Part shown: positions 17,714-24,693 of the stretch, piece after piece
How the letters are laid out: every line of letters starts with the position of its first letter
Position numbering within the stretch: the stretch's first letter is position 1
Assembly (NCBI RefSeq): GCF_000143415.4
Contig: NW_003314318.1
Coordinates: 1,227,690 to 1,291,689, forward strand
Reading direction: 5' to 3'
DNA length: 64,000 bases
DNA from: Selaginella moellendorffii
Taxonomy: Eukaryota > Plantae > Lycopodiophyta
Position numbers and translations under genes: made by a program
Notes under the pieces: generated by a model
What the model was told of the DNA's origin: nothing
What the model saw: only the letters and a program-made list of their open reading frames with translations
Databases searched by the model: none

Positions 17714-19037
17714 CTAGAACCGAGCTTTGCGCTTTCTTCCAGTGTATTTGGTGTCTCTGGGAACTTCATGCCCGGCTTTTCGGCGTTGTTCTTTCTTGCG
17801 GAGAATCCAATCGCGTCCTTTTTTGTTCTTCTTCTCGAGCTTGCTTCTCTTTGCGGGTCTTTCCCTCCCGGAGAATTTCACCTGAGTGTCACAGAAACTT
17901 GAAGTTTAGTGTCTAAGGTATTTTCGCGTACCGTTCTTGCATCTTCTTCTTCATCATCCTCGTCAATCTCGTTGTCTTCACTTTCGCTTCCTCCGTCCTC
18001 GCCCTTGGGTTTTGGAAGTACGCTGGGAGGCCCAGATACCAGACAGAGAAAATACTTCTTCGCGCGAGAGCTGGAGGCATGGAACGTTAAGTTTCTCAAA
18101 GTTGAAAGGAAACTTATAGAGCTTACCTGTGAGGATAATCCACCACAAGACCGCCCGAGAAGCCACAGCGCATAGCTGCGGATGTGATCAACTCAAGCTG
18201 CACAGTGTTCTCGGGATAGATCTGGAGCACTGCTCTGGCACCTCTCGCTAGACAATGGAAGAGCGCCGTAAAGAAACATCTAAAACAACGCGAATTACTT
18301 GAAAGTTTGAAACACGAAACGCTTACTTCAGCCTCTTCCGCGGATCATTGCACGACTTATCGGCGTTGCACAGCCACTGCTCACCTAGCGAAGATCAGGT
18401 CCAACATGGAATAAAAGAGAAAGAAAGAAGGAAAAAGAGAGAGAGGACTCTACCTGGACAGCAGAAATGCTGATCGCTCCATCAAACACTCCTGGCCGTA
18501 GTCCTAATCCCTGCAAGCATTCGCAAAGTCAAGAAGAATCGTAAGAAATGAGAGTACCTGTCCTATGTCTCCTAGAAGTAAATCACCGTCCGCTTCCCGT
18601 TCTAGAGCAACTTCTGGAAGAAAAAAAGTGAAAAGAATGTCAAAACCAAGAAATCCTTCTTCTTTGTCCTAGATCACCTAGCATCGATTGTGAAATGTCC
18701 ATTCCTATCCAGTGATGACCTTTCTCGCTCAAACTTTCTCCACTCAAGCCCGATCCACAACCTGCTCGAAGAAGAGAATCAATACGAAGAAAACAATGCA
18801 AGGAGAGAAAATACCAATGTCAAGAAGAAGCTTTGGTTTGTCATCAGGCAAAGCGAGAAGCTCCATAGCCCTCTCTGTCAGCTTTGCCTTCACAAAATTC
18901 ACGAATAGCTTAAGTGTATGCTCCCAATACCACGCATTTACCTGGATATGGATGATCCGAGACGACGTCGTGTATTTTCGCGACTCGGATTCATTGTAGA
19001 AGAGCTCCGGAGGCGCCTGGCGCTCTGGCCGCGCCAT
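17714..19037 (-). CDS. BUD23: 18S rRNA (guanine-N7) methyltransferase BUD23/WBSCR22/RID2
   Basis: [15 protein letters not shown]...[37 protein letters not shown]-terminal [13 protein letters not shown]...[12 protein letters not shown]. Confidence 0.94.
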
Positions 19038-19085
19038 AAACCCTAATTCTTAGTGTCCACAAACCAAGAACCCTAAAATATCAGG
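19038..19085. promoter_or_regulatory. 48-bp head-to-head spacer with telo-box motifs
   Basis: AAACCCTAA at 19038-19046 and AACCCTAA at 19069-19076, between two divergent ATGs. Confidence 0.55.
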
Positions 19086-19690
19086 ATGAAGATGGGGCTA
19101 CTCCAATTGCCGTCTTCTTTCTCGTATCTTCTCTATAATCCACACCATCGCTCCTCCGCACGATCACCAGCATTTCCATCTGGCATTACTTGCTCGGCAG
19201 CGCGAGTGGAGCGAGCGGCGGCCTCGAGAAGGAGAAGATTGGTAGAAATTGGCGCAGTCTCGGACGAGAAATTCCGGACGATTGCCGCGGCGGCGGTGGC
19301 CCTCCCGATTGGAATGGCAGCGATGGCGGTCTTTGGAGCGTTTCTACTCCAGCGCCAAATCAGGATGGAAGCATTGCGGGACGTAAGTATCAACTAGGAG
19401 AAGAAATCGTGCTGACAAGAGTTTCTTTCTTCCAGGGAGAAGAATTTATTAAGCTGGTCGAGGGTGGAATGGACGAAGAGACTGCCAAGAACACAATTCT
19501 CAGTAGAATCGAGATCATAGGACCGGACCTCAGGAGCGAGTTTAGACGCAAACGTCCGCAAATTCAAGACAAGATCGAGCAGGAGCAGCAGCAGGACGAG
19601 CAAGAGCAAGAACAGGAGCAACAAACCGAGGAGCCCGAGCTGGACACGAAGATTCAAACGCCAGTGACGATGATGCGAGAAGAAAACTAA
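19086..19690 (+). CDS. Small protein of unknown function: putative plastid transit peptide, one TM helix, acidic Q/E-rich tail
   Basis: Exon 19086-19382, phase-0 GT-AG intron 19383-19435 and exon 19436-19690 join in frame (..EALRD|GEEFIKL..). Confidence 0.7.
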
Positions 19691-19716
19691 AATCTGAATG
19701 GACTGATTGATCCATC

Positions 19717-21241
19717 TTAGTTGGCGGATTGGAGGATCCTCTCTGCGACCAGCATGTCGTCTGGTGTAGTTACCTGTAAAACTATCACATTTACTGAAAG
19801 AACCACAAAGAGAAGAAAGGAGTGACTTACTTTCAAGTTGGAGTAAGAGCCCTCTGTGATGAACACTGGACGCTTCAAAAACTCCACAATGGAAACATCA
19901 TCTGTGACCTCCAATCCATCCCTGCATCAAAACCAAGTTCTTTTCACGGCCAACAAAAGAACTGTACGCTCTTGCTCACCTCTCAACAAGTCCGAATCCC
20001 TGACGAAGTAGTGATGGTTCTATAGCCTGCAAGTTAAAGCTAGTAAGTGAGGGAATGTTTCATCGAGTTTTACCTGAGGTGTTTGCATTTCCCACAAGTT
20101 CTGTCTGTTCAATGTCTTTTTGACGAAGTGATCGCTTCCTGCCTGTGGTCAAATTTACTATCAATCCAGAACGAGTATGATCTGCGTACCTCTTTGATAG
20201 TGGCTTTAACACGTACTCCAAGAACGGCAGCTCCATGCACCCAGGCATCTCTCAAAACCTGAAAACCACGCGAACAGTTTGAGTGTTTGAAAGACGAGTA
20301 AGCAACGCATACACCCTCTGTATGTCATGCCCAAGGACAAGAGGTCGCGCAGAATCATGGATACAAGCTAGCTTCGAGTCATCACTGATAGCCTGAAACA
20401 ACCGAGACAACACTAGTTCGATCAGACATGATAAGACCCAAGCAAATTTCACCTGGAGCCCGCTGAAAACAGAATCTTGTCTCTCCCTGCCAGGTAGAGC
20501 AAATTTTACGACTATCTTGATGTTTTTGCTAGCTTCTGAGAAGTAAACGTCTTGAAAAAATGATCAAACTGGCATAATGTTTGTTACCTTCAAACAGATG
20601 CTTGAATGATGGGTCACAAACCACCACAACCTCCTTAACTTCAGGCATGTTAGCAAATGTATAAAAACTGTGGCAAACGCGCTAGCATCAACAAAACGAA
20701 GACCAAGTTATTCCGCACTAACCTGTATAGCGCAATAGGCTGTCCTAGAAGAGGCAAATATTGTTTTGGCATATCAGCCTGCAAGAATAACAATCGCGAT
20801 TAGAAACTCACACAAAAGGGTAGAAAGAGTCAGACTATACCCCCATCCGCTTCCCTACGCCACCAGCAAGTAAGATCACAGATACCGAGTGCTCCGGAAC
20901 CACCTTAAGAATTTGCAAGGAATCAAACAAATCAGCTTCTAAAGGGCTGGAAATCAAGAAACCAACCTCAGAGTCTTCCTTCACCAAGCTGGATGCACAT
21001 AGAGCTGCTGCATTGGCCTTTACTAGCAATCTTGGAACTGCAAGGAAGACAAGAATACTGGGGGTTGATCCAAAACTTATGTTCCATGAGAACCTGAGCG
21101 TGTCAGCAACACACTTTGCTTCCGAGAACAAGCACCAGCAGCACCACAAGGAGCAGCAGAGGAGAATTCACTCTGATATTGAAGCTTGGATTGCCCACCG
21201 CTCGAAAGGGGTACTATGATTCCGGGAGCCACAGCCGCCAT
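19717..21241 (-). CDS. ispD: 2-C-methyl-D-erythritol 4-phosphate cytidylyltransferase (MEP pathway, plastid)
   Basis: Transit peptide MAAVAPG..., [58 protein letters not shown]. Confidence 0.94.
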
Positions 21242-21270
21242 AGCCAGAGCAGTGATGAAAACCCGATTGG

Positions 21271-22330
21271 TCAAAGTTGAGGTTGAGGGTTTGCCCACAA
21301 ACTGTAGTATAAGAACAACTTCCAGAAAAATGTCGGGGCTGCAGATGCTGCTACTAAGACCATACTTATGTTCGCGCTAGTGTTCAAAACAACTAACAAT
21401 CAAACGTAGTCATTTCATCAACAGCCAACAAGAAGTTTTCGTCTTCCATTTCTTACCTTGCAGAGCGACTCCATTGGAGATCAGTACCAACACCTCAATC
21501 ACCAACGCGATATGCGGGGAGAAGTCCCATATCTGCACGAAGCAAGGAACACATAATCGACATACTCGTCGTGCAAATGCAAAGGAAGGATACCATACCA
21601 TCATCGCAAAAATGAAAAGCTTGAAGTAGCTTGAAGAAGTGATTGCGGTAAGGATGTCCATTAAACTCGTCGAGCTGGAACGTTTCTTTGTGAAGAATCT
21701 GTGCATGATCCAGATGCCTGTGATATAGCTACTGAAAGTCACTGCTGCTTTGGCCAACATCTATATCATCGTCACGGAATGTAAAGCACAACTTCTAGAT
21801 CAAATTGCTAGATCACCTTAGCCGATCGATACGAGATGGCAGCGGCCCTCTCAGTGCTAAAATAGTCGTAGAGACATGCTTCCAAAACAACAAGTAGAAG
21901 AACTGCCATCACTACGACCTGCTTTCAAACGACAAAATCAGCTCCCCTCGAGAGAATCGAAAGAGCGAAACACTTACTTTCGAACTTAGAGCGTTGCTGT
22001 TGAAGAACAAGTGCCGGTAAGCCTCTGGCTTGTGCAAGACAATATCAACGAAAACAATCTGGAAAACACGATCCATCATCAAACGCAGAAAGTAGAAGAT
22101 CATCGATCGGAATGACAAGCTTACAATCGGCTCGCACTCCACATATTCATCAGCGACGCATCCACATTTTGGCTGAAAAACAAAACAGAGACAAGATAAA
22201 GAACACGAAGCGATCGAGAACGATTTCCCGCAGATCATCAAGAACTTACGCATTTCCGGAGGCGCAGATTGCCCGGCGAGTACTGCACAAAGGTGCCGAT
22301 CACGGGCGATCCACAGTGCACGCAGCGCAT
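21271..22330 (-). CDS. ARV1: ARV1-family sterol/lipid homeostasis membrane protein
   Basis: Arv1 homology domain MRCVHCG...YSPGNLRLRKC|PKCGCVADEYVECE..IVFVDIVLHKPEAYRHLFFN; TM segments; last exon VALQVVLN...WANPQPQL* with the stop at 21271-21273. Confidence 0.88.
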
Positions 22331-22485
22331 CCTCGCGGAGAATCAAAACCCTAGACCCCGCGGCACAAGAGCACAAAATATTTATTTCCATTGCATTTGC
22401 AGAGACTCGGGGTAAGAGAAAGAATTGCTATTAACACGAGTAGATAGTAAAACTAGCTGCCAAGAAGCTCGGTAAATTCTCCCCG

Positions 22486-22911
22486 CTAGTAGCCACACAA
22501 GCCATAGTCGCAGCGCTTGTTCTTACACACGCGGCCACATTTGCCGCAGTTGCGACTGTCGCGAAGGAGATTGACGCAGCGACCTCTGCAACAGGAATAT
22601 CCCCAGGGGCATCTATTCCAGCAGCTCCCACAGTAGTTTCTATTGGTGAGAATATCCACGCACTGCCTGTTGCAACACGTAGGCCCGGCGGGATTGTACC
22701 TCCCATCCAAGCAAATCGCGGGCTTCCTATCGCAAGTCGCCGGACGTCTTCCACCCCAGAACCACTCGTCCTTGCTTGGACGGGACCATTCCTCCTCTTT
22801 GCTAGGTGGCGGAGATGGAGACGTGGTGGTGCTGGCGAGAGAGGACGAGATCAAGGACGAGAGGAGGAGAATCGCGAGGAATCCCATCAGCCTTTGCCTC
22901 GATCCCGCCAT
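22486..22911 (-). CDS. STIG1-like (stigma-specific/GRIM REAPER family) secreted cysteine-rich peptide
   Basis: Signal peptide plus the STIG1 Cys pattern CC..QCVDILTNRNYCGSCWNRCPWGYSCCRGRCVNLLRDSRNCGKCGRVC. TATA box at about 23028-23034. Confidence 0.9.
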   Translation of the reverse strand: MAGSRQRLMGFLAILLLSSLISSSLASTTTSPSPPPSKEEEWSRPSKDEWFWGGRRPATCDRKPAICLDGRYNPAGPTCCNRQCVDILTNRNYCGSCWNRCPWGYSCCRGRCVNLLRDSRNCGKCGRVCKNKRCDYGLCGY

Positions 22912-22990: not shown

Positions 22991-23504
22991 GAAAGCCTTT
23001 GCTGTTTCGATGCATTGCGTGTGGAGTTTATATACACCACACCCGCGGAGACGTCTGGTTTCCGGGGCCACAAAACATGGCATACTTGTAACGAACGATC
23101 ATGCACGGCGTGCGAGGCCACGATCGCCTTGACAATTTGCAAGGAGACCCCCTGGAAATGATCAAACGGAAAGGTCAAAGGGGTCGCATATTGGAAATCG
23201 TGTCCGTGCTATCACAGCTCGCTTGTCCAAATTGGAACCATGGAAAACAATGTTTCCTCTCATCACAGTACAACATCTCAGTACTTACAACTTTTAGAAT
23301 GCTCATGTTCTCCATATAATCAAAACATCTCTACATTTTGCAGCTAGCCAAGTTGCTAGATACTAGCAAAAATGCCCTTACAATGCTCAGAAGACATGGT
23401 TTTTAAAAACTAGCATCTCAGCATGAGAAAACATGGTTGTTCTAAACTTTCCATCGATCTAAAATCTTCTCGAGCTGAGAGAAGAATTGGGAGCGATCAA
23501 CCAA

Positions 23505-24523: not shown

Positions 24524-24693
24524 CGTCCCTTCCAAACCCTATACTGCCAAGGGAACCGCTTTCCCCTCTTTAAAACGCGAAGTCCCCTTTAGGCATATGC
24601 CAGGAATGTGCACGGGGATATGCGTCCTTTAATGGTTTATATGCCTTTTGATTCGAACTAAACTATAAAAAGGGTGTAAGGGTTTGTAGAGCA

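What the first reader, a model, noticed from the sequence alone, without database searches (positions are those of the whole stretch)
21239..21273. ARV1 stop lies 29 bp before the ispD start on the same strand: candidate dicistronic locus
Seen: ARV1 TGA at 21273-21271 and ispD ATG at 21241, out of frame with each other. I found no alternative in-frame Met before the ispD catalytic domain. There is no room for a 3' UTR, a promoter and a 5' UTR. STIG1 ends only 155 bp upstream of ARV1, giving three tightly packed co-oriented genes. Established: polycistronic nuclear mRNAs occur in green algae but are rare in land plants; ARV1 handles sterol/lipid homeostasis and ispD makes plastid isoprenoid precursors. 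Inference: either a bicistronic mRNA translated by reinitiation or leaky scanning, or overlapping same-strand transcription units with the ispD promoter inside ARV1.
Basis: partly seen in the sequence, partly recalled or inferred. Interest (0 to 1): 0.75.

Follow-up and report, generated by a model that had tools for sequence, protein, structure and literature searches.

The report
Two spikemoss genes 29 bases apart
In the spikemoss Selaginella moellendorffii the sterol-homeostasis gene ARV1 really does end 29 bases before the plastid isoprenoid gene ispD starts, but this most likely reflects two overlapping single-gene messages in a very tightly packed genome, not a two-protein messenger RNA.

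Summary
On the minus strand the ARV1 stop is at 21273-21271 and the only usable ispD ATG is at 21241, 29 nt apart and out of frame. My exon models match the public ones (ARV1 223 aa = XP_024543965.1; IspD 303 aa). The second haplotype of S. moellendorffii has the same 29-nt gap.

The dicistronic reading is not supported by sequence features:
- ARV1 is a long first ORF of 672 nt.
- A spliced two-gene RNA would carry 16 AUGs before the ispD AUG (observed/expected 1.44, against about 0.48 at green-algal bicistrons).
- The junction has no unusual RNA structure, no Rfam match and no UGGGA motif.
- Eleven introns would lie downstream of the ARV1 stop, which should trigger nonsense-mediated decay (NMD).

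The neighbourhood is packed just as tightly where co-transcription is impossible: convergent stops lie 26 nt apart and divergent starts 54 nt apart. ARV1 and two neighbours carry exact telo-box promoter motifs 0-15 nt before their ATGs.

The most likely explanation is two overlapping transcription units, with the ispD start site in the end of ARV1.

The scan has already noted the same layout at several other places in this genome. Interest is low to moderate.

The parts
22486..22911 (-). STIG1-like single-exon ORF (141 aa plus stop)
   Evidence: Pfam Stig1 E=4.2e-22. TATA-like TATAAA at 23032 upstream and AATAAA at 22386-22381, 100 nt after its stop. Not among the public gene calls for this haplotype; an 82-aa call exists in the other haplotype.
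22346..22353 (+). Exact telo-box AAACCCTA (inverted relative to the gene), 15 nt upstream of the ARV1 ATG
   Evidence: The window holds 7 exact matches against 2.07 expected. Telo-boxes concentrate in plant 5' UTRs (PMC3022908).
21271..22330 (-). ARV1 coding region, 7 exons (22330-22250, 22172-22125, 22058-21978, 21918-21817, 21760-21599, 21532-21457, 21392-21271), 223 aa
   Evidence: Translation is identical to P0001/XP_024543965.1. Exons hit Pfam Arv1. The alignment with 10 plant ARV1 proteins supports the last exon.
21271..21273 (-). ARV1 stop codon TGA
21285..21292 (-). Near telo-box AAACCCTC (one mismatch), preceded by TGGGC. It lies in the codons of the ARV1 C-terminal tail, with 43 nt between the motif and the ispD ATG. 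Candidate ispD promoter element; weak evidence.
   Evidence: Read. One-mismatch matches are common (rough chance about 8% per 100 nt), so this is only a lead.
21242..21270 (-). 29-nt spacer between ARV1 stop and ispD ATG. It begins with CCAAT, is pyrimidine-rich, and holds no ATG.
   Evidence: Identical in the second haplotype.
19717..21241 (-). ispD (MEP cytidylyltransferase) coding region, 12 exons, 303 aa. Exon 1 is 21241-21094 and encodes a Ser/Ala-rich presequence; intron 1 is 21093-21038.
   Evidence: model, GT-AG introns of 47-63 nt. Same range and length, with Pfam IspD, in the public call. P-loop aligned to PDB 1W77/2YC3. An 8-nt indel between haplotypes lies in intron 1. 10 nt differences but only 2 aa differences between haplotypes.
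19092..19690 (+). Convergent 181-aa gene of unknown family. Its stop lies 26 nt from the ispD stop.
   Evidence: Public call L001 8641-9239; ORF.
19038..19045 (+). Exact telo-box abutting the ATG (19037) of the Bud23/WBSCR22-like methyltransferase gene, inside a 54-nt divergent spacer
24534..24541 (+). Exact telo-box 10 nt upstream of the ATG (24523) of the HlyIII/adiponectin-receptor-like gene
4804..6467 (+). Decayed inverted copy of STIG1-ARV1-ispD. The 335 bp holding the junction (21074-21408) are deleted from it.
   Evidence: Self-BLAST.

Best explanation
ARV1 and ispD are two separate genes squeezed together in a hyper-compact gene cluster of Selaginella moellendorffii, and their transcription units overlap.

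Shown:
- The two coding regions are 29 nt apart in both haplotypes.
- The ATG at 21241 is the only start that gives a complete, plastid-targeted IspD.
- Both genes are intact and conserved between haplotypes.

Inferred:
- ispD is transcribed from its own start site, which lies in the last about 120 nt of ARV1 (21361-21242, a stretch free of AUGs) or in the spacer itself. Promoter elements would then overlap the last ARV1 codons.
- ARV1 mRNA is cleaved and polyadenylated inside ispD exon 1 or intron 1.
- Each protein is made from its own capped monocistronic mRNA by ordinary scanning.
- Some read-through RNA that carries both ORFs may exist. By analogy with Arabidopsis, it would be degraded by nonsense-mediated decay (NMD) and would not be the source of IspD.
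- The extreme closeness may partly come from a lineage-specific 8-residue lengthening of the ARV1 C-terminus into what was spacer or promoter DNA.
For: (1) The same packing occurs where co-transcription is impossible. The ispD stop and the stop of a convergent gene are 26 nt apart. The ATGs of that gene and the divergent Bud23-like gene are 54 nt apart.

(2) Neighbouring genes show their own promoter marks right at their ATGs. Exact telo-boxes lie 0, 15 and 10 nt before the ATGs of the Bud23-like gene, ARV1 and the HlyIII gene. The window has 7 matches against 2.07 expected, and 1 of 100 shuffles reaches 7. Telo-boxes are concentrated in plant 5' UTRs (PMC3022908). STIG1 has TATAAA upstream and AATAAA downstream. 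The cluster is therefore not one long unit.

(3) Translating ispD from a two-gene RNA looks unworkable:
- ORF1 is 672 nt.
- There are 16 AUGs before the ispD AUG, observed/expected 1.44. Three are in strong context, and the count is above the synonymous-shuffle mean of 12.9.
- Algal bicistrons show AUG depletion (about 0.48) and ORF1 medians of 291-357 nt (PMC11892635).

(4) In Arabidopsis, second ORFs of read-through bicistronic RNAs are rarely translated, and such RNAs are NMD targets (PMC9768141). Here 11 introns would follow the ARV1 stop.

(5) ispD is under purifying selection between haplotypes (10 nt differences, 2 aa differences), so it needs efficient expression.

(6) The last 121 nt before the ispD AUG hold no AUG, which would give a clean leader for an internal start site.

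(7) ARV1 ends 8 residues later than its moss, fern and lycophyte relatives.

(8) The pair is not conserved. Diphasiastrum ARV1 has no called gene within 10 kb. Physcomitrium ARV1 RNA contigs of about 1.3 kb carry ARV1 alone, with UTRs of ordinary length.
Against: The ispD start site and the ARV1 poly(A) site are therefore inferred, not observed.

No exact TATA box or telo-box lies before the ispD ATG. There is only a TATACT at 21311 and a one-mismatch telo-box at 21292-21285, which chance could give.

No AAUAAA-like hexamer from a list of 19 variants lies within 420 nt after the ARV1 stop. This leaves room for long read-through. However, the HlyIII gene also lacks one for about 470 nt, and plant poly(A) signals are loose.

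The 29-nt spacing itself is within the range of algal bicistrons (Auxenochlorella median 40 nt).
Confidence: 0.72

Rival explanations
1. Functional dicistronic mRNA. One capped transcript from the ARV1 promoter carries both ORFs, and IspD is translated from it by leaky scanning or by termination-reinitiation 29 nt after the ARV1 stop.
For: The 29-nt same-strand gap is conserved in both haplotypes. No canonical poly(A) hexamer lies within 420 nt after the ARV1 stop, and no exact TATA or telo-box lies before ispD. Short inter-ORF distances are typical of algal bicistrons.
Against: - 16 AUGs lie before the ispD AUG, not depleted (obs/exp 1.44), and three are in strong context.
- ORF1 is 223 codons, well above algal ORF1 medians, and long for reinitiation (established knowledge of eukaryotic reinitiation).
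- The ARV1 AUG has A at -3.
- The junction RNA is less structured than shuffles (z +0.96), with no Rfam element and no UGGGA motif.
- 11 introns downstream of the ARV1 stop would make the RNA an NMD target. In Arabidopsis, second ORFs of such RNAs are rarely translated.
- The adjacency is absent in Diphasiastrum.
Confidence: 0.07
2. A gene-model artefact. The true ARV1 last exon or the true ispD first exon lies elsewhere, so the 29-nt gap is not real at the mRNA level.
For: ispD exon 1 encodes a presequence that homology cannot check (no Pfam hit). An older public model of this ARV1 locus (P0002 = EFJ15764.1, partial) differs from the current one.
Against: The ARV1 last exon aligns with ARV1 proteins of mosses, ferns, lycophytes and angiosperms through the conserved SNxVAL(K/Q)V...NT block and the last helix. 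My models equal the public ones in range and length. All introns are GT-AG and 47-119 nt long. Haplotype indels of 8 and 10 nt fall in the predicted introns, and none falls in an exon. No other Met precedes the catalytic P-loop.
Confidence: 0.06
3. Regulatory coupling by transcriptional interference. The overlap is used, not merely tolerated. ARV1 transcription through the ispD promoter lowers ispD output, or the reverse, linking sterol handling to plastid isoprenoid supply.
For: This is only the geometry implied by the best explanation. Both genes relate loosely to isoprenoid-derived lipids.
Against: The adjacency is not conserved in Diphasiastrum. Equally tight gaps join unrelated genes throughout this cluster and, by earlier unchecked notes, across this genome. 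Plant sterols derive mainly from the cytosolic mevalonate route, not the MEP route (established knowledge).
Confidence: 0.1

Closest known systems
Tandem overlapping or read-through gene pairs in land plants (for example the 271 read-through loci of Arabidopsis, PMC9768141)
   Same: Same-strand neighbours whose transcripts can run into each other. Each gene is also expressed on its own. The downstream ORF of any joint RNA is rarely translated, and the joint RNA is an NMD target.
   Different: Here the coding regions are only 29 nt apart, so overlap of the two units is obligatory rather than occasional. No RNA data were available to show either the separate or the joint transcripts.
Green-algal bicistronic loci translated by leaky scanning (PMC7896298, PMC11892635)
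   Same: Two unrelated nuclear ORFs on one strand with a very short inter-ORF gap (algal medians 40-260 nt), out of frame with each other.
   Different: Algal ORF1s are short (medians 291-357 nt), depleted of AUGs (obs/exp about 0.48) and have weak start contexts. ARV1 is 672 nt with 16 AUGs (obs/exp 1.44) and A at -3. Algal pairs are conserved across species, but this pair is not found in Diphasiastrum.
CDC26-TTM3 bicistronic transcript of land plants (as summarised in PMC9768141)
   Same: A land-plant case where two proteins are encoded on one nuclear transcript.
   Different: From my own knowledge, not checked here, CDC26 is a very short upstream ORF, which allows scanning past it. ARV1 is a full-length multi-pass membrane protein ORF.
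Telo-box promoters of plant housekeeping genes (PMC3022908)
   Same: AAACCCTA lies in or next to very short 5' leaders of ARV1, the Bud23-like gene and the HlyIII gene in this cluster.
   Different: ispD itself has only a one-mismatch version, and that lies inside ARV1 coding sequence.

Membership tests
Bicistronic nuclear locus of the green-algal (leaky scanning) type | One capped, polyadenylated transcript carries both ORFs (long-read evidence) | not testable with these tools
Protein look-ups found no assembled RNA contig for this locus.
Bicistronic nuclear locus of the green-algal (leaky scanning) type | Short inter-ORF distance | tested here: met
   29 nt, against algal medians of 40-260 nt.
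Bicistronic nuclear locus of the green-algal (leaky scanning) type | Depletion of AUG triplets before ORF 2 (obs/exp about 0.48) | tested here: not met
   16 AUGs in 701 nt, obs/exp 1.44. 98% of synonymous shuffles have as many or fewer.
Bicistronic nuclear locus of the green-algal (leaky scanning) type | Short ORF 1 with a weak start context | tested here: not met
   ORF 1 is 672 nt, against medians of 291-357 nt. The ARV1 ATG has A at -3 and C at +4. No Selaginella-specific start-context model was available, so the context part of this feature is only indicative.
Bicistronic nuclear locus of the green-algal (leaky scanning) type | Conservation of the gene pair across species | tested here: not met
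   Diphasiastrum ARV1 has no called neighbour within 10 kb. Physcomitrium ARV1 RNA contigs hold no IspD. No other Selaginella genome could be searched.
Termination-reinitiation (viral TURBS-like or short-uORF type) | Overlapping or nearly touching stop and start codons, an upstream 18S-complementary UGGGA motif or structure, or a very short ORF 1 | tested here: not met
   The gap is 29 nt and ORF 1 is 223 codons. No UGGGA occurs in the 159 nt before the ispD AUG. The fold is no more stable than shuffles (z +0.96).
Overlapping tandem transcription units in a compact genome | Coding regions too close to hold a 3' UTR, a promoter and a 5' UTR | tested here: met
   29 nt in both haplotypes.
Overlapping tandem transcription units in a compact genome | Comparable packing of neighbours that cannot share a transcript | tested here: met
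   Convergent stops 26 nt apart and divergent ATGs 54 nt apart in the same cluster.
Overlapping tandem transcription units in a compact genome | Independent start site for the downstream gene and a poly(A) site for the upstream gene | not testable with these tools
   No reads were available. Motif evidence for ispD is weak.
ARV1 family (Pfam PF04161) | N-terminal CxxC...CxxC zinc-ribbon-like homology domain and conserved membrane region | tested here: met
   Exons hit PF04161. Invariant C3, C6, C27, C30 and the SSYFK and SN..AL blocks appear in the alignment.
IspD / MEP cytidylyltransferase (Pfam PF01128) | Family domain with the N-terminal G-x-G-x-R-M nucleotide-binding loop | tested here: met
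   PF01128 on the public 303-aa product and on the last two exons. The loop aligns to Arabidopsis IspD structures.

The most novel reading that the evidence does not exclude
A vascular plant expresses an essential plastid enzyme (IspD) from the second cistron of a spliced nuclear mRNA whose first cistron is a full-length, AUG-rich 223-codon membrane protein gene. This would need a long-ORF termination-reinitiation or internal-entry mechanism not described for plant cellular genes.
Probability: 0.06. Interest if true: 0.7.

Novelty: new member of a known kind. Interest (0 to 1): 0.25.

Why it matters
If the ordinary reading holds, the locus is one more clear example of how far gene packing goes in the small Selaginella genome. 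A promoter and a leader must sit inside the neighbour's last coding exon, and a 3' end must sit inside the next gene. That is useful for annotating transcript ends and for studying promoter-in-gene architecture and transcriptional interference in plants.

It would matter much more if long reads showed a translated two-gene message. Functional bicistronic nuclear mRNAs with a long first ORF are not known in land plants.

Tried and rejected
- Exact-product look-up of the STIG1-like ORF found nothing. P0002 also found nothing.
- Protein searches meant to catch assembled RNA fragments found no Logan contigs of this species. These used the genomic ORF around ispD exon 1 and the 116-aa ORF over ARV1 exons 5-6. 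The full-length IspD product could not be reached, because no stop-free reference is long enough for the tool's length window.
Exons were searched by reference, and the public protein id P0001 was used instead. Joined translations were computed only in local scripts, for length comparison and AUG counts.
- The decayed duplicate in the window was checked for the junction, but it has lost exactly that part.
- An ARV1-IspD fusion by read-through or alternative splicing was rejected. The frames differ, and the ispD frame has a stop at about 21379-21377 just inside the last ARV1 exon.
- An Rfam scan and folding of the junction gave nothing.
- Literature searches for Selaginella polycistronic or long-read transcript studies found no paper on this locus.
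- The one-mismatch telo-box and the CCAAT in front of ispD were considered as promoter evidence. They were rated too weak to count.

Full report
**What is there**

On the minus strand of the window, ARV1 runs from the ATG at 22330 to the TGA at 21273-21271. It has seven exons with GT-AG introns. The 223-aa translation is identical to the public protein P0001, XP_024543965.1 'protein arv1 homolog [Selaginella moellendorffii]'.

Twenty-nine bases further on (21270-21242) lies the ATG of ispD at 21241. My 12-exon model (introns 47-63 nt) gives 303 aa. That matches the range and length of the public gene call carrying Pfam IspD (L001 7090-8614).

The window is identical to scaffold GL377622.1 of assembly GCA_000143415.2.

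**Checks on the two gene ends**

The last ARV1 exon is supported by homology. It aligns with ARV1 proteins of moss, ferns, a lycophyte and angiosperms through the conserved SN..AL.V block and the final helix. The Selaginella protein runs 8 residues longer (WANPQPQL) than its moss, fern and lycophyte relatives.

ispD exon 1 encodes a Ser/Ala-rich presequence with no family match, as expected of a transit peptide. The next Met is residue 92, inside the GVGKRM nucleotide-binding loop. That loop aligns to residues 2-18 of the Arabidopsis IspD crystal constructs. The ATG at 21241 is thus the only start that yields a whole enzyme.

The ispD frame is open upstream to about 21377 but holds no ATG. The two frames differ, and the upstream stop in the ispD frame rules out a spliced fusion.

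**Second haplotype**

The allelic scaffold GL377565.1 carries the same order of genes and the same 29-nt gap. The junction is identical. The nearest differences are a synonymous change at 21300 and, in ispD intron 1, a single-base change at 21085 and an 8-nt indel at 21061-21054.

Between haplotypes ispD differs at 10 coding nucleotides but only 2 residues. ARV1 differs at 5 nucleotides and 2 residues. Introns differ more. Both genes are intact and constrained.

**The neighbourhood**

The public calls around the pair show a hyper-compact cluster:
- HlyIII gene to STIG1-like ORF: about 590 nt.
- STIG1-like ORF to ARV1: 155 nt.
- ARV1 to ispD: 29 nt.
- ispD stop to the stop of a convergent 181-aa gene: 26 nt.
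- That gene's ATG to the ATG of the divergent Bud23-like methyltransferase: 54 nt.

The convergent and divergent pairs cannot share an mRNA. Untranslated regions and promoters must therefore overlap neighbouring genes here as a rule.

**Promoter and terminator marks**

The window has 7 exact matches against 2.07 expected, and 1 of 100 shuffles reaches 7. Three of the matches sit 0, 15 and 10 nt before the ATGs of the Bud23-like gene, ARV1 and the HlyIII gene. In Arabidopsis and rice this motif is concentrated in 5' UTRs: 680 per Mb there, against 87 per Mb in 3' UTRs and 75 per Mb in coding sequence (PMC3022908).

STIG1 has TATAAA about 120 nt before its ATG and AATAAA 100 nt after its stop. 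STIG1 and ARV1 therefore each look self-sufficient, and the 'three-gene unit' idea loses support.

For ispD itself the marks are weak:
- TATACT at 21311.
- A one-mismatch telo-box, AAACCCTC, at 21292-21285, preceded by TGGGC. It lies in the codons of the ARV1 C-terminal tail.
- A CCAAT directly after the stop, then a pyrimidine-rich stretch.

Chance could give these.

**Could a two-gene RNA make IspD?**

On a hypothetical spliced ARV1-ispD RNA, the 701 nt before the ispD AUG hold 16 AUGs. That is observed/expected 1.44 and above the mean of 12.9 in synonymous shuffles. Three of the AUGs are in strong context, and the ARV1 AUG has A at -3.

Green-algal bicistrons are translated by leaky scanning. 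They show the opposite features: ORF 1 medians of 291-357 nt, weak ORF 1 contexts, and AUG depletion to about 0.48 (PMC7896298, PMC11892635).

Reinitiation after a 223-codon ORF, with only 29 nt to recharge, is not expected from established knowledge of eukaryotic translation. The junction offers no help:
- No UGGGA motif.
- No Rfam element.
- A fold weaker than shuffles, z +0.96.

In Arabidopsis, 271 loci give read-through bicistronic RNAs. Their second ORFs are rarely translated, and the RNAs are NMD targets (PMC9768141). Here 11 spliced introns would lie downstream of the ARV1 stop.

**Conservation of the pair**

ARV1 of the lycophyte Diphasiastrum has no called gene within 10 kb. Physcomitrium ARV1 sits on RNA contigs of about 1.3 kb with ordinary UTRs and no IspD.

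Inside the window, an old inverted copy of STIG1-ARV1-ispD shows that the gene order predates that duplication. The copy has lost the 335 bp that include the junction.

**What could not be done**

No reads were laid, and no transcript start or end was seen. Attempts to reach assembled RNA contigs through protein look-ups failed.

Exons were searched by reference, and the public id P0001 was used. Joined translations were made only in local scripts.

**Verdict**

The best reading (about 0.72) is two overlapping transcription units. In this reading the ispD start site lies in the AUG-free last 121 nt before its ATG, and the ARV1 3' end lies inside ispD exon 1 or intron 1. Both positions are inferred, not shown.

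A functional dicistron stays possible at about 0.06-0.07. The lack of a recognisable poly(A) hexamer for 420 nt after the ARV1 stop is the one feature that keeps read-through open. However, the HlyIII gene lacks one as well.

Earlier notes of this scan describe the same layout at several other loci of this genome, with the same tentative conclusion. Those notes are unchecked and were used only as leads.

Noticed in passing
window 19038-19045, 22346-22353, 24534-24541: Exact telo-boxes (AAACCCTA, all inverted relative to the genes) lie 0, 15 and 10 nt before the ATGs of the Bud23-like methyltransferase, ARV1 and the HlyIII-family gene. This implies extremely short 5' leaders in this cluster.
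   Followed up: partly
window 19691-19716: The ispD stop (19717) and the stop of a convergent 181-aa gene without Pfam family (19690) are only 26 nt apart. Their 3' UTRs must overlap each other's coding sequence in antisense.
   Followed up: no
window 19037-19092: The divergent ATGs of the Bud23-like gene and the 181-aa gene are 54 nt apart. The spacer holds an exact telo-box and a second TTAGGGTT motif, so it may be a minimal bidirectional promoter.
   Followed up: no
window 22486-22911: An intact 141-aa STIG1-like ORF (Pfam Stig1 E=4e-22) is absent from the public gene calls of this haplotype. In the other haplotype it is called as only 82 aa.
   Followed up: partly
window 4804-6467 versus 20111-22827: The decayed inverted copy of STIG1-ARV1-ispD (70-93% identity) has a 335-bp deletion that removes the ARV1 last exon, the spacer and ispD exon 1. 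It also has a small local inversion (20838-20948 matches 5804-5914 in the opposite sense to its neighbours).
   Followed up: partly
window about 19531 (L002 versus L001): The 181-aa convergent gene differs in length between haplotypes (181 vs 183 aa). The alignment places an indel in its Gln/Glu-rich repeat.
   Followed up: no
P0002 (EFJ15764.1), same scaffold: An older partial public ARV1 model (127 aa) reads into intron 3 and skips exon 4 and part of exon 5. It appears to be a superseded model of the same locus.
   Followed up: partly
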